From: Ranitomeya imitator
Taxonomy: Eukaryota
Direction of reading: 5' to 3'
Length of the DNA stretch: 64,000 nucleotides
NCBI RefSeq assembly: GCF_032444005.1
Contig: NC_091284.1
Location: forward strand, 621,488,001 to 621,552,000
Positions 6,587 to 62,942 of this stretch are shown one piece after another. How positions within the stretch are numbered: the stretch's first letter is position 1; each line of letters starts with the position of its first letter. The position numbers and the translations under genes were made by a program. Under the pieces are notes generated by a model. It was not told the DNA's origin, ran no database searches, and worked only from the letters and a program-made list of their open reading frames with translations.

Positions 6587-6719
6587 NNNNNNNNNNNNNN
6601 NNNNNNNNNNNNNNNNNNNNNNNNNNNNNNNNNNNNNNNNNNNNNNNNNNNNNNNNNNNNNNNNNNNNNNNNNNNNNNNNNNNNNNNNNNNNNNNNNNNN
6701 NNNNNNNNNNNNNNNNNNN
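6587..6719. other. Assembly gap (N run)
   Basis: Direct reading. Confidence 1.
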
Positions 6720-9109: not shown

Positions 9110-9244
9110 NNNNNNNNNNNNNNNNNNNNNNNNNNNNNNNNNNNNNNNNNNNNNNNNNNNNNNNNNNNNNNNNNNNNNNNNNNNNNNNNNNNNNNNNNNN
9201 NNNNNNNNNNNNNNNNNNNNNNNNNNNNNNNNNNNNNNNNNNNN
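9110..9244. other. Assembly gap (N run)
   Basis: Direct reading. Confidence 1.
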
Positions 9245-14539: not shown

Positions 14540-15932
14540 CTAGATGGTAGCCTGATTCTAACACATCGGGTATTCTAGAATATGTATGTAGTTTATTTAT
14601 GAAGATTTTAGAATAATACATTGAATACACAGGATTCGGCTGGCCGCGACCAATTAGCGAAGCATGCTTCAAATCCCACTCCACACCGGACTGCGCCTGT
14701 TGCTGATTGTTCACGGCTGGCCACGTAGTATGTAGCACAGCCACGTAGTATATAACAGCCCACGTAGTATATTGCACAGACACTTAGTATATTGCACAGC
14801 CCACATAGTATATTGCACAGCCCACGTAGTATATTGCACAGGCCACATAGTATATTGCACAGCCCACACAGTATATTGCACAGCCTATTGCACAGCCCAC
14901 GTAGTATATTGCACAGCCCACATAGAATATTGCACAGCCCGCATAGTATATTGCACAGCCCACATAGTATATCGCCCAGCCCACGTAGTATATTTCCCAG
15001 CCCACGTAGTATATTGCACAGCCCACGTAGTATATTACCCAGCCCACGTAGTATATTGCACAGCCCACGCAGTATATTGCACAGCCTATTGCACAGCCCA
15101 CGTAGTATATTGCACAACCCACATAGTATATTGCACAGCCCACGTAGTATATTGCACAGCACACGTAGTATAGTGCCCAGCCCATGTAGTATATTGCACA
15201 GCCCATGTAGTATATTGCACAGCCCATGTAGTATATTGCACAGCCCACGCAGAATATAGCAATGTGGGCATCATATCCCTGTTAAAAAAAAGAAATAAAA
15301 TAAAAAATCGTTATATACTCACATTCCGTTGGCCCCCGGATCATGGTGAAGCGGTTACCAATGTTCCTCGCATGCTCCAGTCAGATGAGTGCATTGCGGT
15401 CTCGCGAGATGATGACGTTGCGGTCTCGCGAGACCGCTACATCATCATCTCGTGAGATCGCAATGCATGGGGCGGTCACCGGAATGTCGCGAGGAGCGGG
15501 AAAGGCCTGTTCTGGATCCGAGGCGCCGACGGACGGTGAGTATATAACGATTTTTGATTTTTTAAATTATTTTTAACATTATATCTTTTTACTATTGATG
15601 CTGCATAGGCAGCATCAGTAGTAAAATGTTGGTCACACAGGGTTAATAGCAGCATTAACGGAGTGCGTAACACCGCGGGATAACGCGGTCCGTTAGCGCT
15701 GCCATTAACCCTGGGTGAGCGCTGACTGGAGGGGATTATGGAGCGGACACTGACTGCAGGGAGGAAGTAGCGGCCATTTTGCCGCCGGACTATGCCCGTC
15801 GCTGATTGGTCGTGGCTGTTTTGCCGTGACCACTCAGCGACTTGGATTTCCATGACAGACAGAGGCCGCGACCAATGAATATCTGTGACAGACAGAAAGA
15901 CGGAAGTGACCCTTAGACAATTATATAGTAGA
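14540..15932 (-). mobile_element. Non-autonomous Helitron, family A
   Basis: Minus strand A|TCTACTATATAA...CCCGATGTGTTAGAATCAGG (hairpin)...CTAG|T; no TSD, A/T insertion site. Confidence 0.8.
14720..15255. repeat. 21-bp minisatellite (GCCCACGTAGTATATTGCACA) inside the Helitron
   Basis: About two dozen tandem units read directly. Confidence 0.95.
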
Positions 15933-23228: not shown

Positions 23229-23933
23229 NNNNNNNNNNNNNNNNNNNNNNNNNNNNNNNNNNNNNNNNNNNNNNNNNNNNNNNNNNNNNNNNNNNNNNNN
23301 NNNNNNNNNNNNNNNNNNNNNNNNNNNNNNNNNNNNNNNNNNNNNNNNNNNNNNNNNNNNNNNNNNNTCTCATNNNNNNNNNNNNNNNNNNNNNNNNNNN
23401 NNNNNNNNNNNNNNNNNNNNNNNNNNNNNNNNNNNNNNNNNNNNNNNNNNNNNNNNNNNNNNNNNNNNNNNNNNNNNNNNNNNNNNNNNNNNNNNNNNNN
23501 NNNNNNNNNNNNNNNNNNNNNNNNNNNNNNNNNNNNNNNNNNNNNNNNNNNNNNNNNNNNNNNNNNNNNNNNNNNNNNNNNNNNNNNNNNNNNNNNNNNN
23601 NNNNNNNNNNNNNNNNNNNNNNNNNNNNNNNNNNNNNNNNNNNNNNNNNNNNNNNNNNNNNNNNNNNNNNNNNNNNNNNNNNNNNNNNNNNNNNNNNNNN
23701 NNNNNNNNNNNNNNNNNNNNNNNNNNNNNNNNNNNNNNNNNNNNNNNNNNNNNNNNNNNNNNNNNNNNNNNNNNNNNNNNNNNNNNNNNNNNNNNNNNNN
23801 NNNNNNNNNNNNNNNNNNNNNNNNNNNNNNNNNNNNNNNNNNNNNNNNNNNNNNNNNNNNNNNNNNNNNNNNNNNNNNNNNNNNNNNNNNNNNNNNNNNN
23901 NNNNNNNNNNNNNNNNNNNNNNNNNNNNNNNNN
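23229..23933. other. Assembly gap (N run with a 6-base island)
   Basis: Direct reading. Confidence 1.
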
Positions 23934-47713: not shown

Positions 47714-47995
47714 NNNNNNNNNNNNNNNNNNNNNNNNNNNNNNNNNNNNNNNNNNNNNNNNNNNNNNNNNNNNNNNNNNNNNNNNNNNNNNNNNNNNNNN
47801 NNNNNNNNNNNNNNNNNNNNNNNNNNNNNNNNNNNNNNNNNNNNNNNNNNNNNNNNNNNNNNNNNNNNNNNNNNNNNNNNNNNNNNNNNNNNNNNNNNNN
47901 NNNNNNNNNNNNNNNNNNNNNNNNNNNNNNNNNNNNNNNNNNNNNNNNNNNNNNNNNNNNNNNNNNNNNNNNNNNNNNNNNNNNNNNNNNNNNNN
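47714..47995. other. Assembly gap (N run)
   Basis: Direct reading. Confidence 1.
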
Positions 47996-55681: not shown

Positions 55682-57643
55682 TTAAAAAGGTTCTGCATAA
55701 ATAGTCTGTTCACATTATTGCTCACTTCCCTAGCACTGAATAATCAACTTAAATCTGGGAGAAAATTTAGCAACAAGAGTTCTTTAATGCAACTAAAGTG
55801 CAAAAATTACTTTACACAATGTGCAATTTTTTAAATTCAATTTAGCTCTTCTCCATTGTTTCTAAACCCGAGACCCTTGCATAATAACTCAGAATTCTGT
55901 AATGAAGCGTTTGAAAATATGTTTTCTAAAACCTAACTTCTCAACCAGTGGTTGGTCTACATGAGCTAATACATACAGGAGGTATTCAGTGCACGCTCAT
56001 GTGCTATTGGGCAGCACAGTGTATTCTCATAGCCATTATGGTGATTTGCTTAAGAACCTTGATGTATACTGCTCTAACTCCGGCACCTTTTAGGCCTCAT
56101 TTAGACATTTATTATTCACACACGTGTTCTATCCGTGGTTTTCTTAGATTAAACATATCGAAACCAGTAAGTCTAACCTCTATTGTTGGTAAAATATTTG
56201 AAGGGTTTCTGAGGGATGTTATTCTGGATTATCTCAATGAGAATAACTGTTTAACTCCATATCAGCATGGGTTTATGAGAAATCGCTCCTGTCAAACCAA
56301 TCTAATCAGTTTTTATGAAGAGGTAAGCTATAGACTGGACCACGGTGAGTCATTGGACGTGGTATATCTCGATTTTTCCAAAGCGTTTGATACCGTGCCG
56401 CACAAGAGGTTGGTACACAAAATGAGAATGCTTGGTCTGGGGGAAAATGTGTGTAAATGGGTTAGTAACTGGCTTAGTGATAGAAAGCAGAGGGTGGTTA
56501 TAAATGGTATAGTCTCTAACTGGGTCGCTGTGACCAGTGGGGTACCGCAGGGGTCAGTATTGGGACCTGTTCTCTTCAACATATTCATTAATGATCTGGT
56601 AGAAGGTTTACACAGTAAAATATCGATATTTGCAGATGATACAAAACTATGTAAAGCAGTTAATACAAGAGAAGATAGTATTCTGCTACAGATGGATCTG
56701 GATAAGTTGGAAACTTGGGCTGAAAGGTGGCAGATGAGGTTTAACAATGATAAATGTAAGGTTATACACATGGGAAGAGGGAATGAATATCACCATTACA
56801 CACTGAACGGGAAACCACTGGGTAAATCTGACAGGGAGAAGGACTTGGGGATCCTAGTTAATGATAAACTTACCTGGAGCAGCCAGTGCCAGGCAGCAGC
56901 TGCCAAGGCAAACAGGATCATGGGGTGCATTAAAAGAGGTCTGGATACACATGATGAGAGCATTATACTGCCTCTGTACAAATCCCTAGTTAGACCGCAC
57001 ATGGAGTACTGTGTCCAGTTTTGGGCACCGGTGCTCAGGAAGGATATAATGGAACTAGAGAGAGTACAAAGGAGGGCAACAAAATTAATAAAGGGGATGG
57101 GAGAACTACAATACCCAGATAGATTAGCGAAATTAGGATTATTTAGTCTAGAAAAAAGACGACTGAGGGGCGATCTAATAACCATGTATAAGTATATAAG
57201 GGGACAATACAAATATCTCGCTGAGGATCTGTTTATACAGCATAGCCAGCCACTAGACTCTAAAACTTAACATTTAATATGTATACCTCTAAAATTATGT
57301 GTACTTTAAAAACAATTAGGTGCTCATGTTTAAACGTGCACTAGACAAGAAAAATGGCATGATCTCACCCAATTGCTGTCTCTCTTCTTGTTACAGATTC
57401 TTGTGCTTATTGAGAGCACGGCATGGGACGGAGACCAATAGACCTTTTCCAATGGGGGGGAGAAGAAAAGAAAAAAAAAAAAAAAAGATATAGGTAGGTG
57501 GGGGGGAAGGGTTTGAAGCTATCTTCCCTGTCGTGCCCCGTGTATAAGACTCCCGCCCTAACAAGGGCAGTCCCCAAGTTTGAGCCTACTTAATGAAGCC
57601 CTTTGGTTAATATAACCACCCTGGATGATATGTCCTCTTTCTC

Positions 57644-57688
57644 TTCCCAACGCGTTTCCCTCCCCGTTACGGGGGTTCATCAGGGGAA
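57644..57688 (-). ncRNA. Minimal type-I hammerhead ribozyme motif (mirror copy)
   Basis: Exact reverse complement of 57870-57914. Confidence 0.6.
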
Positions 57689-57869
57689 TAAAATGTCCAG
57701 GTTAAATGTCCAGGTTAATGGAGGTATTCTGCAGTGGCAGACAAAACCTCATTCAGCGGCGTCCTCCATGTGACTGCCTTATCCTCACATGGAGGACGCC
57801 GCTGAATGAGGTTATGTCTGCCACTGCAGAATACCTCCATTAACCTGGACATTTAACCTGGACATTTTA

Positions 57870-57914
57870 TTCCCCTGATGAACCCCCGTAACGGGGAGGG
57901 AAACGCGTTGGGAA
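57870..57914 (+). ncRNA. Minimal type-I hammerhead ribozyme motif
   Basis: UUCCC-CUGAUGA-AC-CCCCG-UAA-CGGGG-AGG-GAAAC-GC-GUU-GGGAA: 5-bp stem I, intact core, palindromic ACGCGU stem III, GUU triplet; activity untested. Confidence 0.62.
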
Positions 57915-58753
57915 GAGAAAGAGGACATATCATCCAGGGTGGTTATATTAACCAAAGGGCTTCATTAAGTAGGCTCAAACTTGGGGACTGCCCTTGTTAG
58001 GGCGGGAGTCTTATACACGGGGCACGACAGGGAAGATAGCTTCAAACCCTTCCCCCCCACCTACCTATATCTTTTTTTTTTTTTTCTTTTTTCTTTTCTT
58101 CTCCCCCCCATTGGAAAAGGTCTATTGGTCTCCGTCCCATGCCGTGCTCTCAATAAGCACAAGAATCTGTAACAAGAAGAGAGACAGCAATTGGGTGAGA
58201 TCATGCCATTTTTCTTGTCTAGTGCACGTTTAAACATGAGCACCTAATTGTTTTTAAAGTACACATAATTTTAGAGGTATACATATTAAATGTTAAGTTT
58301 TAGAGTCTAGTGGCTGGCTATGCTGGGTTGTTAGTTAAAAGTGGTCAGACGTGATTAGGAACGATACGTTCTGGTTTCTTTCTTTTTTCCTGCTGAATTC
58401 ATACAAGGATCTGTTTATACCAAGGAAGGTGACGGGTACAAGGGGGCATTCTTTGCGTCTGGAGGAGAGAAGGTTTTTCCACCAACATAGAAGAGGAATC
58501 TTTACTGTTAGGGCAGTGAGAATCTGGAATTGCTTGCCTGAGGAGGTGGTGATGACGAACTCAGTCGAGGGGTTCAAGAGAGGCCTGGATGTCTTCCTGG
58601 AGCAGAACAATATTGTATCATACAATTATTAGGTTCTGTAGAAGGACGTAGATCTGGGTACTTATTATGATGGAATATAGGCTGAACTGGATGGACAAAT
58701 GTCTTTTTTCGGCCTTACTAACTATGTTACTATGTATGTTACTATGAAACAAA

Positions 58754-60490
58754 TCTATAATATAAGGCTGGGAGCGTCACTGTGTCCGAAGCCTTTTTAG
58801 ACTGCGCAAGCGCAAGCGCCGGCGCAGTCTGGACCCCACAGAGTGATGCTCCAAGGAGATCCCGGTATGCGTAAGCACTGAACGCACACCGTGATCTCCA
58901 ATGGATAGCAGGGACGCGCCAGGAGGGTGAGTATGAGCTATATTCACCTGGCCCTGATCCAGCGCTGCCCGCCGCTCTGTCCTCCGGGTCCTCTGCTGTG
59001 ACGTTCACAGTTCAGAGGGCGCGATGACGCGCTTAATGCGCGCCGCCCTCTGACTGAACAGTCACAGCCTGAGGACCTGGAACACGGAGCGGAACGCAGC
59101 GCTGGATCAGGGCCAGGTGAATATAGCAAGTGTTGGGGGCCTGAGCTAGCGGCAACTCCGGCACCTGACCCCGACAGCGCGCCGATGTCCCCGCCTGCTC
59201 AGGCCCCCCAGCACTCGGCGCCCAGCGACGATAGGTGAGTATGGTATTTTTTTTATATATATCGCAGCAGCATACGGGGCATAAACTATGGAGCATCTTA
59301 TGGGGCCATCAACCATAATGGAGCAGTGTACGGGGGCATATACCATGGAGCATCTTATGGGGGCGATAAACCTTTATGGAGCAGTGTACGGGGCATATAA
59401 TATGGAGCATCTTATGGGGGCCATAAACCTTTATGGAGAAGTGTACGGTGGCATATACAATGGAGCATCTTATGGGGGCCATAAACGTTTATGGAGCAGT
59501 GTACGGGGCATATACTATGGAGCATCTTATGGGGGCTATAAACCTTTATGGAGCAGTGTACGGGCATATACTATGGAGCATCTTATGGGGGCCATAAACC
59601 TTTATGGAGCAGTGTACGGGCATATACTATGGAGCATCTTATGGGGACCTTTATGGAGCAGCGTATGGGGCATATGGATGGAAGCAGCAAATTACAGAAC
59701 GGTGGCGCAGGATGGGAGCAGCACATGACAGAATGGGGGCGCAGGATGGGAGCAGCACATGATAGAATAGGGCAGCACATGACAGAACGGGGGTGCAGGA
59801 TGGCAGCAGCACATGACAGAAGGGGGGTGCAGGATGGAAGCAGCACATGACAGAACGGGGGCACAGGATGGGAGCAGCACATGACAGAACGAGGGTGCAG
59901 GATGGCAGCAGCACATGACAGAACGGGGGTGCAGGATGAAAGCAGAACATGACAGAACGGGGGTGCAGGATGGCAGCAGCACATGACAGAACGGGGGTGC
60001 AGGATGGAAGCAGCACATGACAGAACGGGGGCGCAGGATGGCAGCAGCACATGACAGAACGCGGGCGCAGGATGGGAGCAGCACATGACAGGATAGGGGC
60101 GCAGGATGGGAGCAGCAAATTACAGAATGGAGGCGCAGGATGGGTGCAGCACATGTCAGAATAAAGGCGCAGGATGGGTGCAGCACATGTCAGAATGGAG
60201 GCGCAGGATGGGTGCAGCACATGTCAGAATGGGGGCGCAGGATGGGAGCAGCACATGTCAGAATGGGGGCGCAGGATGGGTGCAGCACATGACAGGATGG
60301 GGACGCAGGATGGAGCAGCACATGACAGGATGGGGGCACAGGATGGAGCAACTCATGACAGGATGGGAACGCAGGATGGAGCAGCACATGACAGGATGGG
60401 TGTGCAGGATGGAGCAGCACATACCAGGATGGAGACCATATACCAATATAAATGCTCGCCACCTGGGCATAGAACGGGTTCAATAGCTAG
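58754..60490 (+). mobile_element. Non-autonomous Helitron, family B, copy 2, with the same two minisatellite arrays
   Basis: A|TCTATAATATAAGGCTGGGAGCGTCAC...GAACGGGTTCAATAGCTAG|T. Confidence 0.85.
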
Positions 60491-61546: not shown

Positions 61547-62942
61547 TGGGGCAAAAAAGTATTTAGTCAGTCAGCAATAGTGCAAGTTCCACCACTTAAA
61601 AAGATGGGAGGCGTCTGTAATTTACATCATAGGTAGAACTCACCTATGGGAGACAAACTGAGAAAAAAAAATCCAGAAAATCACATTGTCTGTTTTTTTT
61701 AACATTTTATTTGCATATTATGGTGGAAAATAAGTATTTGGTCAGAAACAAAATTCCATCTCAATACTTTGTAATATATCCTTTGTTGGCAATGACAGAG
61801 GTCAAACGTTTTCTGTAAGTCTTCACAAGGTTGCCACACACTGTTGTTGGTATGTTGGCCCATTCCTCCATGCAGATCTCCTCTAGAGCAGTGATGTTTT
61901 TGGCTTTTCGCTTGGCAACACGGACTTTCAACTCCCTCCAAAGGTTTTCTATAGGGTTGAGATCTGGAGACTGGCTAGGCCACTCCACTCCGGGACCTTG
62001 AAATGCTTCTTACGAAGCCACTCCTTCGTTGCCCTGGCGGTGTGCTTTGGATCATTGTCATGTTGAAAGACCCAGCCATGTTTCATCTTCAATGCCCTTG
62101 CTGATGGAAGGAGGTTTGCACTCAAAATCTCACGATACATGGCCCCATTCATTCTTTCATGTACCCGGATCAGTTGTCCTGGCCCCTTTGCAAAGAAACA
62201 GCCCCAAAGCATGATGTTTCCACCACCATGCTTTACAGTAGGTATGGTGTTTGATGGATGCAACTCAGTATTCTTTTTCCTCCAAACACGACAAGTTGTG
62301 TTTCTACCAAACAGTTCCAGTTTGATTTCATCAGACCATAGGACATTCTCCCAAAACTCCTCTGGATCATCCAAATGCTCTCTAGCAAACTTCAGATGGG
62401 CCCGGACATGTACTGGCTTAAGCAGTGGGACACGTCTGGCACTGCAGGATCTGAGTCCATGGTGGCATAGTGTGTTACTTATGGTAGGCCTTGTTACATT
62501 GGTCCCAGCTCTCTGCAGTTCATTCACTAGGTCCCCCCGCGTGGTTCTGGGATTTTTGCTCACCGTTCTTGTGATCATTCTGACCCCACGGGGTGGGATT
62601 TTGCGTGGAGCCCCAGATCGAGGGAGATTATCAGTGGTCTTGTATGTTTTCCATTTTCTAATTATTGCTCCCACTGTTGATTTCTTCACTCCAAGCTGGT
62701 TGGCTATTGCAGATTCAGTCTTCCCAGCCTGGTGCAGGGCTACAATTTTGTTTCTGGTGTCCTTTGACAGCTCTTTGGTCTTCACCATAGTGGAGTTTGG
62801 AGTCAGACTGTTTGAGGGTGTGCACAGGTGTCTTTTTATACTGATAACAAGTTTAAACAGGCGCCATTACTACAGGTAATGAATGGAGGAAAGAGGAGAC
62901 TCTTAAAGAAGAAGTTACAGGTCTGTGAGAGCCAGAAATCTT
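61544..62942 (-). mobile_element. Tc1-family transposon 3; the TIR upstream of the transposase gene is missing or displaced
   Basis: TA|CAGTGGGGCAAAAAAGTATTTAG terminus plus a near-intact transposase. Confidence 0.92.
61761..62788 (-). pseudogene. Tc1 (DD34E) transposase, full length apart from one frameshift
   Basis: ORF 61949-62788 ([10 protein letters not shown]...GAPRK...WSDE...[13 protein letters not shown]...HDNDPKH) joins ORF 61761-61988 ([15 protein letters not shown]); duplicated CACTC at 61981-61990. Confidence 0.92.

What the first reader, a model, noticed from the sequence alone, without database searches (positions are those of the whole stretch)
57239..58405. 1.17-kb fold-back element with a hammerhead on each strand, inserted into CR1 ORF2 with a 15-bp TSD
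Seen: two arms of about 540 bp form a near-perfect hairpin with an 11-nt loop. The differences I could see are one substitution and homopolymer-length changes. A 13-bp internal duplication (AAATGTCCAGGTT x2) is present in both arms, so it predates the inversion. Each arm has a complete CUGAUGA/GAAAC core with a 5-bp stem I and palindromic stem III. An ~80-bp extension occurs on the right only. The CR1 frame resumes after a perfect 15-bp TSD. There is no ORF. Established: Penelope-like elements (PLEs) carry minimal type-I hammerheads with short palindromic stem III and can show inverted terminal repeats. Inference: this is a young non-autonomous, retrozyme/PLE-like element that was mobilised as, or converted during insertion into, a hairpin. 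Transcription from either side would give a self-cleaving motif and long dsRNA.
Basis: partly seen in the sequence, partly recalled or inferred. Interest (0 to 1): 0.8.

Follow-up and report, generated by a model that had tools for sequence, protein, structure and literature searches.

The report
Head-to-head Penelope-type retroelement insertion
A short retroelement carrying a minimal hammerhead ribozyme motif landed in a frog CR1 LINE as two mirror-image copies, which is the usual insertion signature of Penelope-like elements rather than a new kind of mobile hairpin.

Summary
There are two arms of 535/541 nt (57239-57773 and 57785-58325). They differ by one substitution and one 5-nt indel in a T-run. 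An 11-nt loop joins them, an 80-nt extension sits on the right only, and a perfect 15-bp TSD flanks the whole. Removing the element and one TSD copy in silico restores a continuous 500-aa CR1-type ORF that aligns across the junction to 111 homologs.

Each arm carries a complete minimal type-I hammerhead motif. A descriptor for it gave 0 hits in 300 shuffles of the window. Rfam's hammerhead models did not detect it.

Head-to-head inverted copies, a one-sided "tail", a variable TSD and a min-hammerhead with palindromic helix III are published hallmarks of Penelope-like element (PLE) insertions. Pairs of min-hammerheads on opposite strands have already been reported.

The fold-back is most likely a by-product of a single insertion event. 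The ribozyme is unlikely to work at this locus, because it needs a same-sense partner and lies buried in a ~535-bp duplex.

No RT/GIY-YIG gene and no second copy could be found, so PLE membership rests on architecture alone.

Verdict: real, clean and young, but a new member of a known kind. Interest is low to moderate.

The parts
55948..57238 (+). Host CR1-clade LINE ORF2, the part upstream of the insertion (reverse-transcriptase domain)
   Evidence: Pfam RVT_1, E=9e-31. The best homologs are Ranitomeya imitator at 93% identity, Xenopus at 66%, and birds and turtles at 50-56%.
57224..57238 (.). Left copy of the 15-bp target-site duplication AGGATCTGTTTATAC
   Evidence: Family D2, 100% identical to the right copy. 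It encodes the residues EDLFI of the host ORF.
57239..57773 (-). Left arm: an antisense copy of the element that lacks the last 80 nt (tail)
   Evidence: It is 98.9% identical to the right arm in the BLAST alignment, differing by 1 substitution and one 5-nt indel.
57644..57688 (-). Min-hammerhead motif on the minus strand, the mirror of the plus-strand motif. The predicted cleavage site lies between 57649 and 57648.
   Evidence: Descriptor hit and pattern hit.
57774..57784 (.). 11-nt loop (CTGCCTTATCC) at the head-to-head junction
   Evidence: pair I1, 11 nt between the arms.
57785..58325 (+). Right arm: the sense copy of the element
57870..57914 (+). Min-hammerhead, type I. Helix I is UUCCC/GGGAA. 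The core CUGAUGA is followed by one extra A. Helix II is CCCCC...GGGGAGG with one bulge. Then come GAAA, the palindromic ACGCGU, and H17=U. The predicted cleavage site is after 57909.
57840..57865 (+). 13-bp tandem duplication just upstream of the hammerhead, mirrored at 57691-57716
   Evidence: (D5, D6).
58326..58405 (+). 80-nt 3' extension ('tail') present only on the sense copy. It ends ...GAATTCATACA, with no poly(A).
   Evidence: It has no exceptional predicted structure (z=0.61).
58406..58420 (.). Right copy of the 15-bp TSD
   Evidence: family D2.
58421..58632 (+). Host CR1 ORF2 C-terminal part, in frame with the upstream part once the insert and one TSD copy are removed

Best explanation
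One retrotransposition event of a Penelope-like-element (PLE) type placed a short hammerhead-bearing RNA into a young CR1 LINE copy of a frog genome. The RNA was about 620-630 nt. It was either a non-autonomous PLE derivative or the 3'-terminal pLTR part of a PLE.

Shown: two staggered nicks 15 bp apart gave the TSD.

Inferred: the bottom-strand 3'-OH primed reverse transcription at the distal start site (58405). This produced the sense copy with its 80-nt tail. The top-strand 3'-OH primed a second cDNA at a proximal start site (equivalent to 58325). This produced the tail-less inverted copy. [quoted passage not shown]

The hammerhead on each strand is simply the same motif copied twice. At this locus the structure is a dead-end product. 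The min-hammerhead needs a same-sense partner and is sequestered in a ~535-bp perfect duplex. If the locus is transcribed, the main product would be long hairpin dsRNA, not self-cleaved RNA.
For: Discrete insertion: there is a perfect 15-bp TSD, and the host ORF is restored gap-free against 111 homologs.

Arms: they are near-identical and share an internal 13-bp duplication, so they were copied from one source.

Geometry: the copies lie head-to-head, with both hammerheads pointing outward, and the extension is on one side only.

Hammerhead: the full min-hammerhead core is present, including the extra nucleotide after A9, a long helix II, a 5-bp helix I and a palindromic 15.x-16.x segment. It is not expected by chance (0 hits in 300 shuffles). 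All these features are listed for metazoan PLE hammerheads in PMC4209133.

Literature on PLE insertions:
- PLE insertions often carry an adjacent inverted 5'-truncated copy and a tail at one end only (PMC8557442; PMC3846280).
- The Anolis PLE protein nicks and extends both target strands. It starts reverse transcription at two internal sites, and the interval between those sites is the tail (PMC11167929).
- As in that PLE, the AUG inside CUGAUGA opens an ORF here, though only 40 codons long.
- PLEs are annotated across anurans, including dendrobatids (PMC12822217).
Against: No PLE reverse transcriptase or GIY-YIG gene is in the element or was found in the ORFs scanned (10 ORFs incl. the largest).

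No homology of the arm to any PLE could be tested, because no other copy was retrievable.

Rfam hammerhead models do not score the motif.

The 10.1-11.1 pair is C-G rather than the G-C reported as highly conserved.

The tail is 80 nt against the published 30-40 nt.

The hammerhead lies 416-496 nt from the 3' end, whereas in the Anolis PLE it is about 90 nt away.

The 40-codon ORF has no PLE-like homolog.

The two cDNAs ending within 11 nt of each other is explained only if the template had a defined 5' end. A snap-back model explains that more simply.
Confidence: 0.7

Rival explanations
1. Same PLE-type event, but the inverted arm arose by snap-back. A single cDNA primed at 58405 folded back on itself after about 632 nt and copied itself for about 536 nt. 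It was then joined to the upstream target end at a 1-nt microhomology.
For: The arms end within 11 nt of each other with a tiny loop, which a hairpin-primed copy gives automatically. The only differences are one substitution and slippage in a T-run, as expected for copying one arm from the other. There is 1 nt of microhomology at the left junction (C57238). Self-priming was proposed for PLE palindromic junctions in PMC3846280.
Against: The loop ends show no complementarity that could prime the fold-back. Snap-back synthesis should run through the tail into the flanking DNA, not stop 80 nt short. In vitro, the PLE enzyme extends both strands from two start sites, which explains the one-sided tail directly.
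Confidence: 0.3
2. The fold-back itself is the mobile unit. A family of about 1.17-kb hairpin elements would be transcribed and retrotransposed as hairpins, each with a hammerhead in both polarities.
For: Not excluded, because only one copy could be examined.
Against: A ~535-bp perfect RNA hairpin (MFE about -1077 kcal/mol) is a poor reverse-transcription template and a Dicer/ADAR substrate. The arms differ by a slippage indel typical of a fresh copy. Head-to-head structures are known to arise de novo at PLE insertions.
Confidence: 0.07
3. A retroposon unrelated to PLEs, for example a SINE-like hammerhead element mobilised by a LINE such as CR1 or L1, with the inversion produced by twin priming.
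For: TSDs of about 15 bp are typical of LINE-mediated target-primed insertion (my own knowledge). No PLE protein was found nearby.
Against: The element has no poly(A) and no similarity to the host CR1 3' end or microsatellite. There is no tRNA-like head. Twin priming inverts an adjacent, non-overlapping segment of the RNA, whereas here the two arms are the same sequence. The hammerhead type is the PLE min-type.
Confidence: 0.1
4. A DNA-level Foldback- or MITE-type transposon with very long terminal inverted repeats.
For: Long, near-perfect inverted repeats with a TSD.
Against: The right terminus is 80 nt of unique sequence, so the repeats are not terminal on both sides. A 15-bp TSD is longer than those of the known cut-and-paste superfamilies (my own knowledge). 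There is no transposase.
Confidence: 0.03
5. Assembly artefact from a fold-back chimeric read.
For: PLE tandem and inverted structures are known to trouble assemblies.
Against: The flanks are collinear, not inverted. The TSD is perfect and the host ORF is restored exactly. The arms are asymmetric and not identical.
Confidence: 0.03

Closest known systems
Endonuclease-positive Penelope-like elements (Penelope/Poseidon and Neptune clades): insertion architecture of pLTR, an inverted 5'-truncated copy and a 'tail'
   Same: Head-to-head inverted copies, an extension at one end only, a TSD of variable length, no poly(A), a hammerhead within the repeated terminal region, and an AUG embedded in CUGAUGA.
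   Different: No RT/GIY-YIG ORF and no direct pLTR pair. The tail is 80 nt rather than 30-40 nt. The hammerhead is 416-496 nt from the 3' end. Homology to a PLE was not demonstrated.
Metazoan PLE minimal hammerheads (min-HHR; Cervera and de la Pena 2014; Lunse et al. 2016-17)
   Same: [quoted passage not shown] Pairs on opposite strands 100-700 bp apart were reported in Schistosoma.
   Different: The 10.1-11.1 pair is C-G rather than G-C. There is a bulged A in helix II. Conservation and cleavage are untested.
Animal non-LTR retrozymes (tandem hammerhead repeats, proposed to be non-autonomous PLE derivatives)
   Same: A short non-coding unit with a type-I hammerhead. The size falls within the reported 51-972 bp range, and such elements are present in all amphibians sampled.
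   Different: No tandem array. There is a single sense copy per strand, so no intramolecular dimer and no obvious route to a circular RNA.
L1 twin-priming inversions
   Same: The inversion is created during target-primed reverse transcription by use of the second nicked strand as a primer.
   Different: Twin priming gives adjacent, non-overlapping segments. Here both arms are the same segment.

Membership tests
Penelope-like element (EN+) | ORF encoding a PLE-clade reverse transcriptase fused to a GIY-YIG endonuclease | tested here: not met
   The longest ORF in the element is 79 aa, and none has a homolog. None of the 10 window ORFs scanned with Pfam (incl. the largest) shows a GIY-YIG domain. 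This is expected for a truncated or non-autonomous copy, so it limits the claim to 'PLE-type insertion'.
Penelope-like element (EN+) | Hammerhead motif in the terminal repeat | tested here: met
   The min-hammerhead descriptor hits both arms and gave 0 hits in 300 shuffles.
Penelope-like element (EN+) | Adjacent inverted 5'-truncated copy (head-to-head) and a tail at one end only | tested here: met
   The tail is 80 nt, longer than the 30-40 nt described.
Penelope-like element (EN+) | Sequence homology of the arm to the pLTR of an autonomous PLE in the same genome | not testable with these tools
   The genome's DNA was not retrievable. There were no matches in metagenome, viral or prokaryote collections.
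Hammerhead ribozyme, type I | Conserved core (C3 U4 G5 A6 N7 G8 A9, G12 A13 A14, A15.1-U16.1, H17) between helices I, II and III | tested here: met
   Read directly from the sequence and by the descriptor.
Hammerhead ribozyme, type I | Match to the curated covariance models (Rfam Hammerhead_1 and relatives) | tested here: not met
   No hammerhead hit at the gathering score or at E<=10 on 1451 nt. The motif lacks a stable helix III and loop-loop contacts.
Hammerhead ribozyme, type I | Self-cleavage | not testable with these tools
   Only thermodynamic prediction was possible. The dimer is favoured for isolated 53-mers (-37.1 vs 2 x -14.5 kcal/mol), but the motif is buried in the fold-back transcript.
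PLE min-hammerhead | Highly conserved G10.1-C11.1 pair | tested here: not met
   The pair is C57883-G57899. The conservation statement comes from PMC4209133.
Non-LTR retrozyme | Tandem head-to-tail repeats, each with a hammerhead | tested here: not met
   There is no direct repeat longer than 22 nt in the region and no second same-sense hammerhead in the window.
Foldback/MITE DNA transposon | Inverted repeats reaching both termini | tested here: not met
   The right terminus is 80 nt of unique sequence.
L1-type twin priming | Inverted and direct segments come from adjacent, non-overlapping parts of the template | tested here: not met
   The arms are the same sequence over 536 aligned nt.

The most novel reading that the evidence does not exclude
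The 1.17-kb fold-back is itself a propagating non-autonomous element. It would be a hairpin RNA that hijacks PLE machinery and offers a hammerhead in both polarities, a DNA-encoded analogue of ambisense viroid-like RNAs. A milder version is that this locus is an in-vivo footprint of dual-strand priming from two start sites 80 nt apart by a frog PLE.
Probability: 0.07. Interest if true: 0.7.

Novelty: new member of a known kind. Interest (0 to 1): 0.25.

Why it matters
This is a very clean, young example of the head-to-head-plus-tail signature of Penelope-type insertion in a vertebrate, with perfect TSD and a target whose pre-insertion sequence can be reconstructed exactly. Such loci are natural records of how PLE enzymes resolve insertion intermediates. 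The open question is whether that involves priming on both strands from two start sites, as seen in vitro for the Anolis element, or cDNA snap-back. A genome-wide set of such insertions could settle this. The locus is also a potential source of long hairpin dsRNA inside a LINE. It does not reveal a new class of element or a new ribozyme arrangement.

Tried and rejected
1. Rfam scans of the whole window at the gathering score, and of 57100-58550 at E<=10, gave no hammerhead. The miRNA-family 'hits' (MIR477 and others) are artefacts of the perfect hairpin tip.

2. BLASTN of the sense copy against the window found no other copy, only low-complexity T/A-run matches.

3. An exact look-up of ten arm ORFs in the protein collection found none. 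A homology search with the 79-aa ORF found none.

4. An HMMER search with the 40-aa ORF that starts at the AUG of CUGAUGA gave two 'hits'. Both are repeat proteins with summed weak matches, so they are spurious.

5. Pattern scans for the hammerhead gave 0 hits with the specific pattern in metagenome and viral contigs. A relaxed pattern gave 3 matches in bacterial contigs. None has a helix I, and about this many are expected by chance.

6. I tried to fetch frog genomic DNA around the closest CR1 protein (Ranitomeya imitator) to look for more copies.

7. ARAGORN found no tRNA-like SINE head. Folding of the tail found no special structure (z=0.61). The bacterial promoter/terminator scan is irrelevant here.

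8. The paper by Lunse et al. on dimeric PLE hammerheads is not held in the library. It is cited only through the review PMC6765202.

Full report
**Observation.**
The sequence is as described. The repeat finder and a global alignment give inverted arms at 57238/9-57773 and 57785-58325. Over 536 aligned positions they differ by one substitution (57744 vs 57814) and one 5-nt indel inside a T-run (58082-58086). An 11-nt loop (57774-57784) separates them. Both arms contain the same 13-bp tandem duplication, at 57691-57716 and 57840-57865. The right copy continues for 80 nt (58326-58405) that the left copy lacks. A perfect 15-bp direct repeat, AGGATCTGTTTATAC, flanks the whole structure at 57224-57238 and 58406-58420. 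One base, C57238, could belong to either the TSD or the arm.

**Host element and empty site.**
- The ORF at 55948-57270 has a Pfam RVT_1 domain.
- Its best relative is a Ranitomeya imitator protein at 93% identity. Xenopus tropicalis and Leptobrachium follow at 61-66%, and many bird and turtle LINE reverse transcriptases at 50-56%.
- This fits a CR1-clade LINE in an anuran genome, probably a dendrobatid. The genus is an inference from one hit.
- Removing the element and one TSD copy in silico gives a single 500-aa ORF that reads ...YLAEDLFIPRKVTGTRGH... across the junction.
- 111 homologs align at least 15 aa to each side of that junction, and the best do so without gaps.
- This is paralogous empty-site evidence for a discrete insertion. 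It argues strongly against a fold-back assembly artefact, which would invert the flanks.

**Hammerhead motif.**
On the plus strand the motif reads as follows:
- helix I, 5' strand: UUCCC (57870-57874)
- core: CUGAUGA (57875-57881), followed by one extra A
- helix II: CCCCC...GGGGAGG, with one bulged A
- GAAA (57900-57903)
- the palindrome ACGCGU, which is A15.1 to U16.1 (57903-57908)
- H17 = U57909
- helix I, 3' strand: GGGAA (57910-57914)

The mirror image lies on the minus strand at 57688-57644. A descriptor written from the published min-hammerhead definition found only these two sites in the window. It found none in 300 dinucleotide-preserving shuffles of the whole window. The bare pattern CTGATGA-N(8-30)-GAAAC has one further match, at 62300-62334. 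That match lacks helix I and is probably chance.

Rfam's hammerhead covariance models do not detect the motif even at E<=10. This fits a motif with no stable helix III and no loop-loop contacts.

Cervera and de la Pena (PMC4209133) describe metazoan PLE hammerheads with the following features:
- a long helix II
- a 4-5 bp helix I
- a palindromic 15.2-16.2 segment

The motif here has all four. The one departure is that the 10.1-11.1 pair is C-G here, whereas G-C is reported as highly conserved. The same paper reports about 9,000 min-hammerheads in Xenopus tropicalis. It also reports pairs of motifs 100-700 bp apart on opposite strands in Schistosoma, which is the arrangement seen here.

**Would the ribozyme work here?**
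Two isolated 53-nt RNAs are predicted to prefer the double-hammerhead dimer, with helix I formed in trans and an intermolecular AACGCGUU helix (-37.1 vs 2 x -14.5 kcal/mol). The monomer fold is unremarkable (z=-0.09). A transcript of the locus from either strand carries only one sense motif plus its exact complement. In the predicted fold, 534 of 535 left-arm nucleotides pair with the right arm (about -1077 kcal/mol). Self-cleavage at this locus is therefore unlikely. The expected product is long hairpin dsRNA. PLE min-hammerheads are in any case weak in vitro. The Anolis PLE hammerhead cleaved only when its protein was present.

**What it is.**
Head-to-head inverted copies, a one-sided extension and a TSD match the published description of PLE insertions:
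- In Adineta vaga, inserts with an inverted pLTR, a 31-bp tail on one of the inverted pLTRs and 8-10-bp TSDs, with head-to-head as the most frequent arrangement (PMC3846280).

Frangieh et al. (PMC11167929) showed that the Anolis PLE protein nicks and extends both target strands. Reverse transcription starts at two internal sites that are not homologous to the target, and the tail is the interval between them. The ORF's AUG lies at the start of helix II of the hammerhead. Here too the AUG inside CUGAUGA opens an ORF (57878-58000), but it stops after 40 codons and has no real homolog.

**Mechanism.**
I conclude that a single PLE-type retrotransposition event produced the structure.

- *Preferred sub-mechanism.* The bottom strand primed at the distal site (58405) and the top strand primed at a proximal site (equivalent to 58325). 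The two cDNAs were joined head-to-head by a template jump. This explains the one-sided tail directly. It requires a template with a defined 5' end near 57774-57785, that is, a discrete unit of about 620-630 nt.
- *Main rival.* The cDNA snapped back on itself. This explains the tiny loop and the near-identity of the arms most simply. It does not explain why copying stopped 80 nt short of the end.

The data in one locus cannot separate these two.

**Alternatives considered and judged unlikely.**
- A hairpin that is itself the mobile unit.
- A LINE-mobilised retroposon. There is no poly(A), no similarity to the CR1 3' end and no tRNA-like head.
- L1-style twin priming. The arms are the same segment, not adjacent ones.
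- A Foldback/MITE DNA transposon. The right terminus is unique sequence, and a 15-bp TSD is atypical.

**Limits.**
No RT/GIY-YIG gene lies in the element or in the 10 window ORFs (incl. the largest) that were scanned. No second copy could be found:
- none in the window
- none among 15 billion proteins through arm ORFs
- none in metagenome, viral or prokaryote contigs
- the relevant frog assembly's DNA could not be fetched

PLE membership therefore rests on architecture and hammerhead type, not on homology. Whether the unit is non-autonomous or a severe 5' truncation is open. Differences from described PLEs are the 80-nt tail, the hammerhead lying 416-496 nt from the 3' end, and the C-G pair at 10.1-11.1.

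**Age (inference).**
The TSD is 15/15 identical and the arms differ by one substitution in 536 nt. The host CR1 ORF is still open. Together these indicate a recent event. Gene conversion between the arms could make it look younger than it is.

**Verdict.**
The feature is real and accurately observed. It is a new instance of a known kind, a PLE-type head-to-head insertion carrying the family's minimal hammerhead. The hammerhead on each strand is a trivial consequence of the inversion and is unlikely to be catalytically relevant at this locus.

Noticed in passing
window 61952-62788 (-): A 279-aa ORF with Sleeping Beauty-type HTH and Tc3 transposase HTH domains (Pfam HTH_SB E=1e-22, HTH_Tnp_Tc3_2 E=1e-20). 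It is a Tc1/mariner transposon fragment. The third CTGATGA...GAAAC pattern match (62300-62334, minus strand) lies inside it, has no helix I and looks like chance.
   Followed up: partly
window 59266-59646 and 59772-60422: Two minisatellite arrays lie just downstream of the CR1. One has a 57-bp unit in 6.7 copies (92% matches) and the other a 34-bp unit in 19.3 copies (90% matches). Long spurious ORFs run through them on both strands.
   Followed up: partly
window 58937-58993 / 59071-59127: A 57-nt inverted repeat, 88% complementary, with arms 77 nt apart, GC-rich, immediately 3' of the CR1 tail. It could be a small hairpin element or MITE.
   Followed up: no
window 14611-15162 (-): A 184-aa ORF with a sub-threshold match to the Msx2-interacting protein (SPEN) RAM7 domain (E=1.2e-8, 35.7 bits against a cut-off of 108). 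It may be a host-gene exon or a chance match.
   Followed up: no
window 57732-57826: Rfam miRNA-precursor models (MIR477 at 48 bits, mir-875, mir-3118) match the tip of the fold-back, all below their gathering scores. These are generic matches to a perfect hairpin, not evidence of a miRNA gene.
   Followed up: yes
window 58715-58746: The CR1 copy ends in a 12-bp microsatellite-like repeat (TTACTATGTATG, 2.7 copies), the kind of short 3' repeat typical of CR1 tails. The inserted element has no similarity to it.
   Followed up: partly
window 6587-6719, 9110-9244, 23229-23933, 47714-47995: Runs of N totalling 1249 bases.
   Followed up: no
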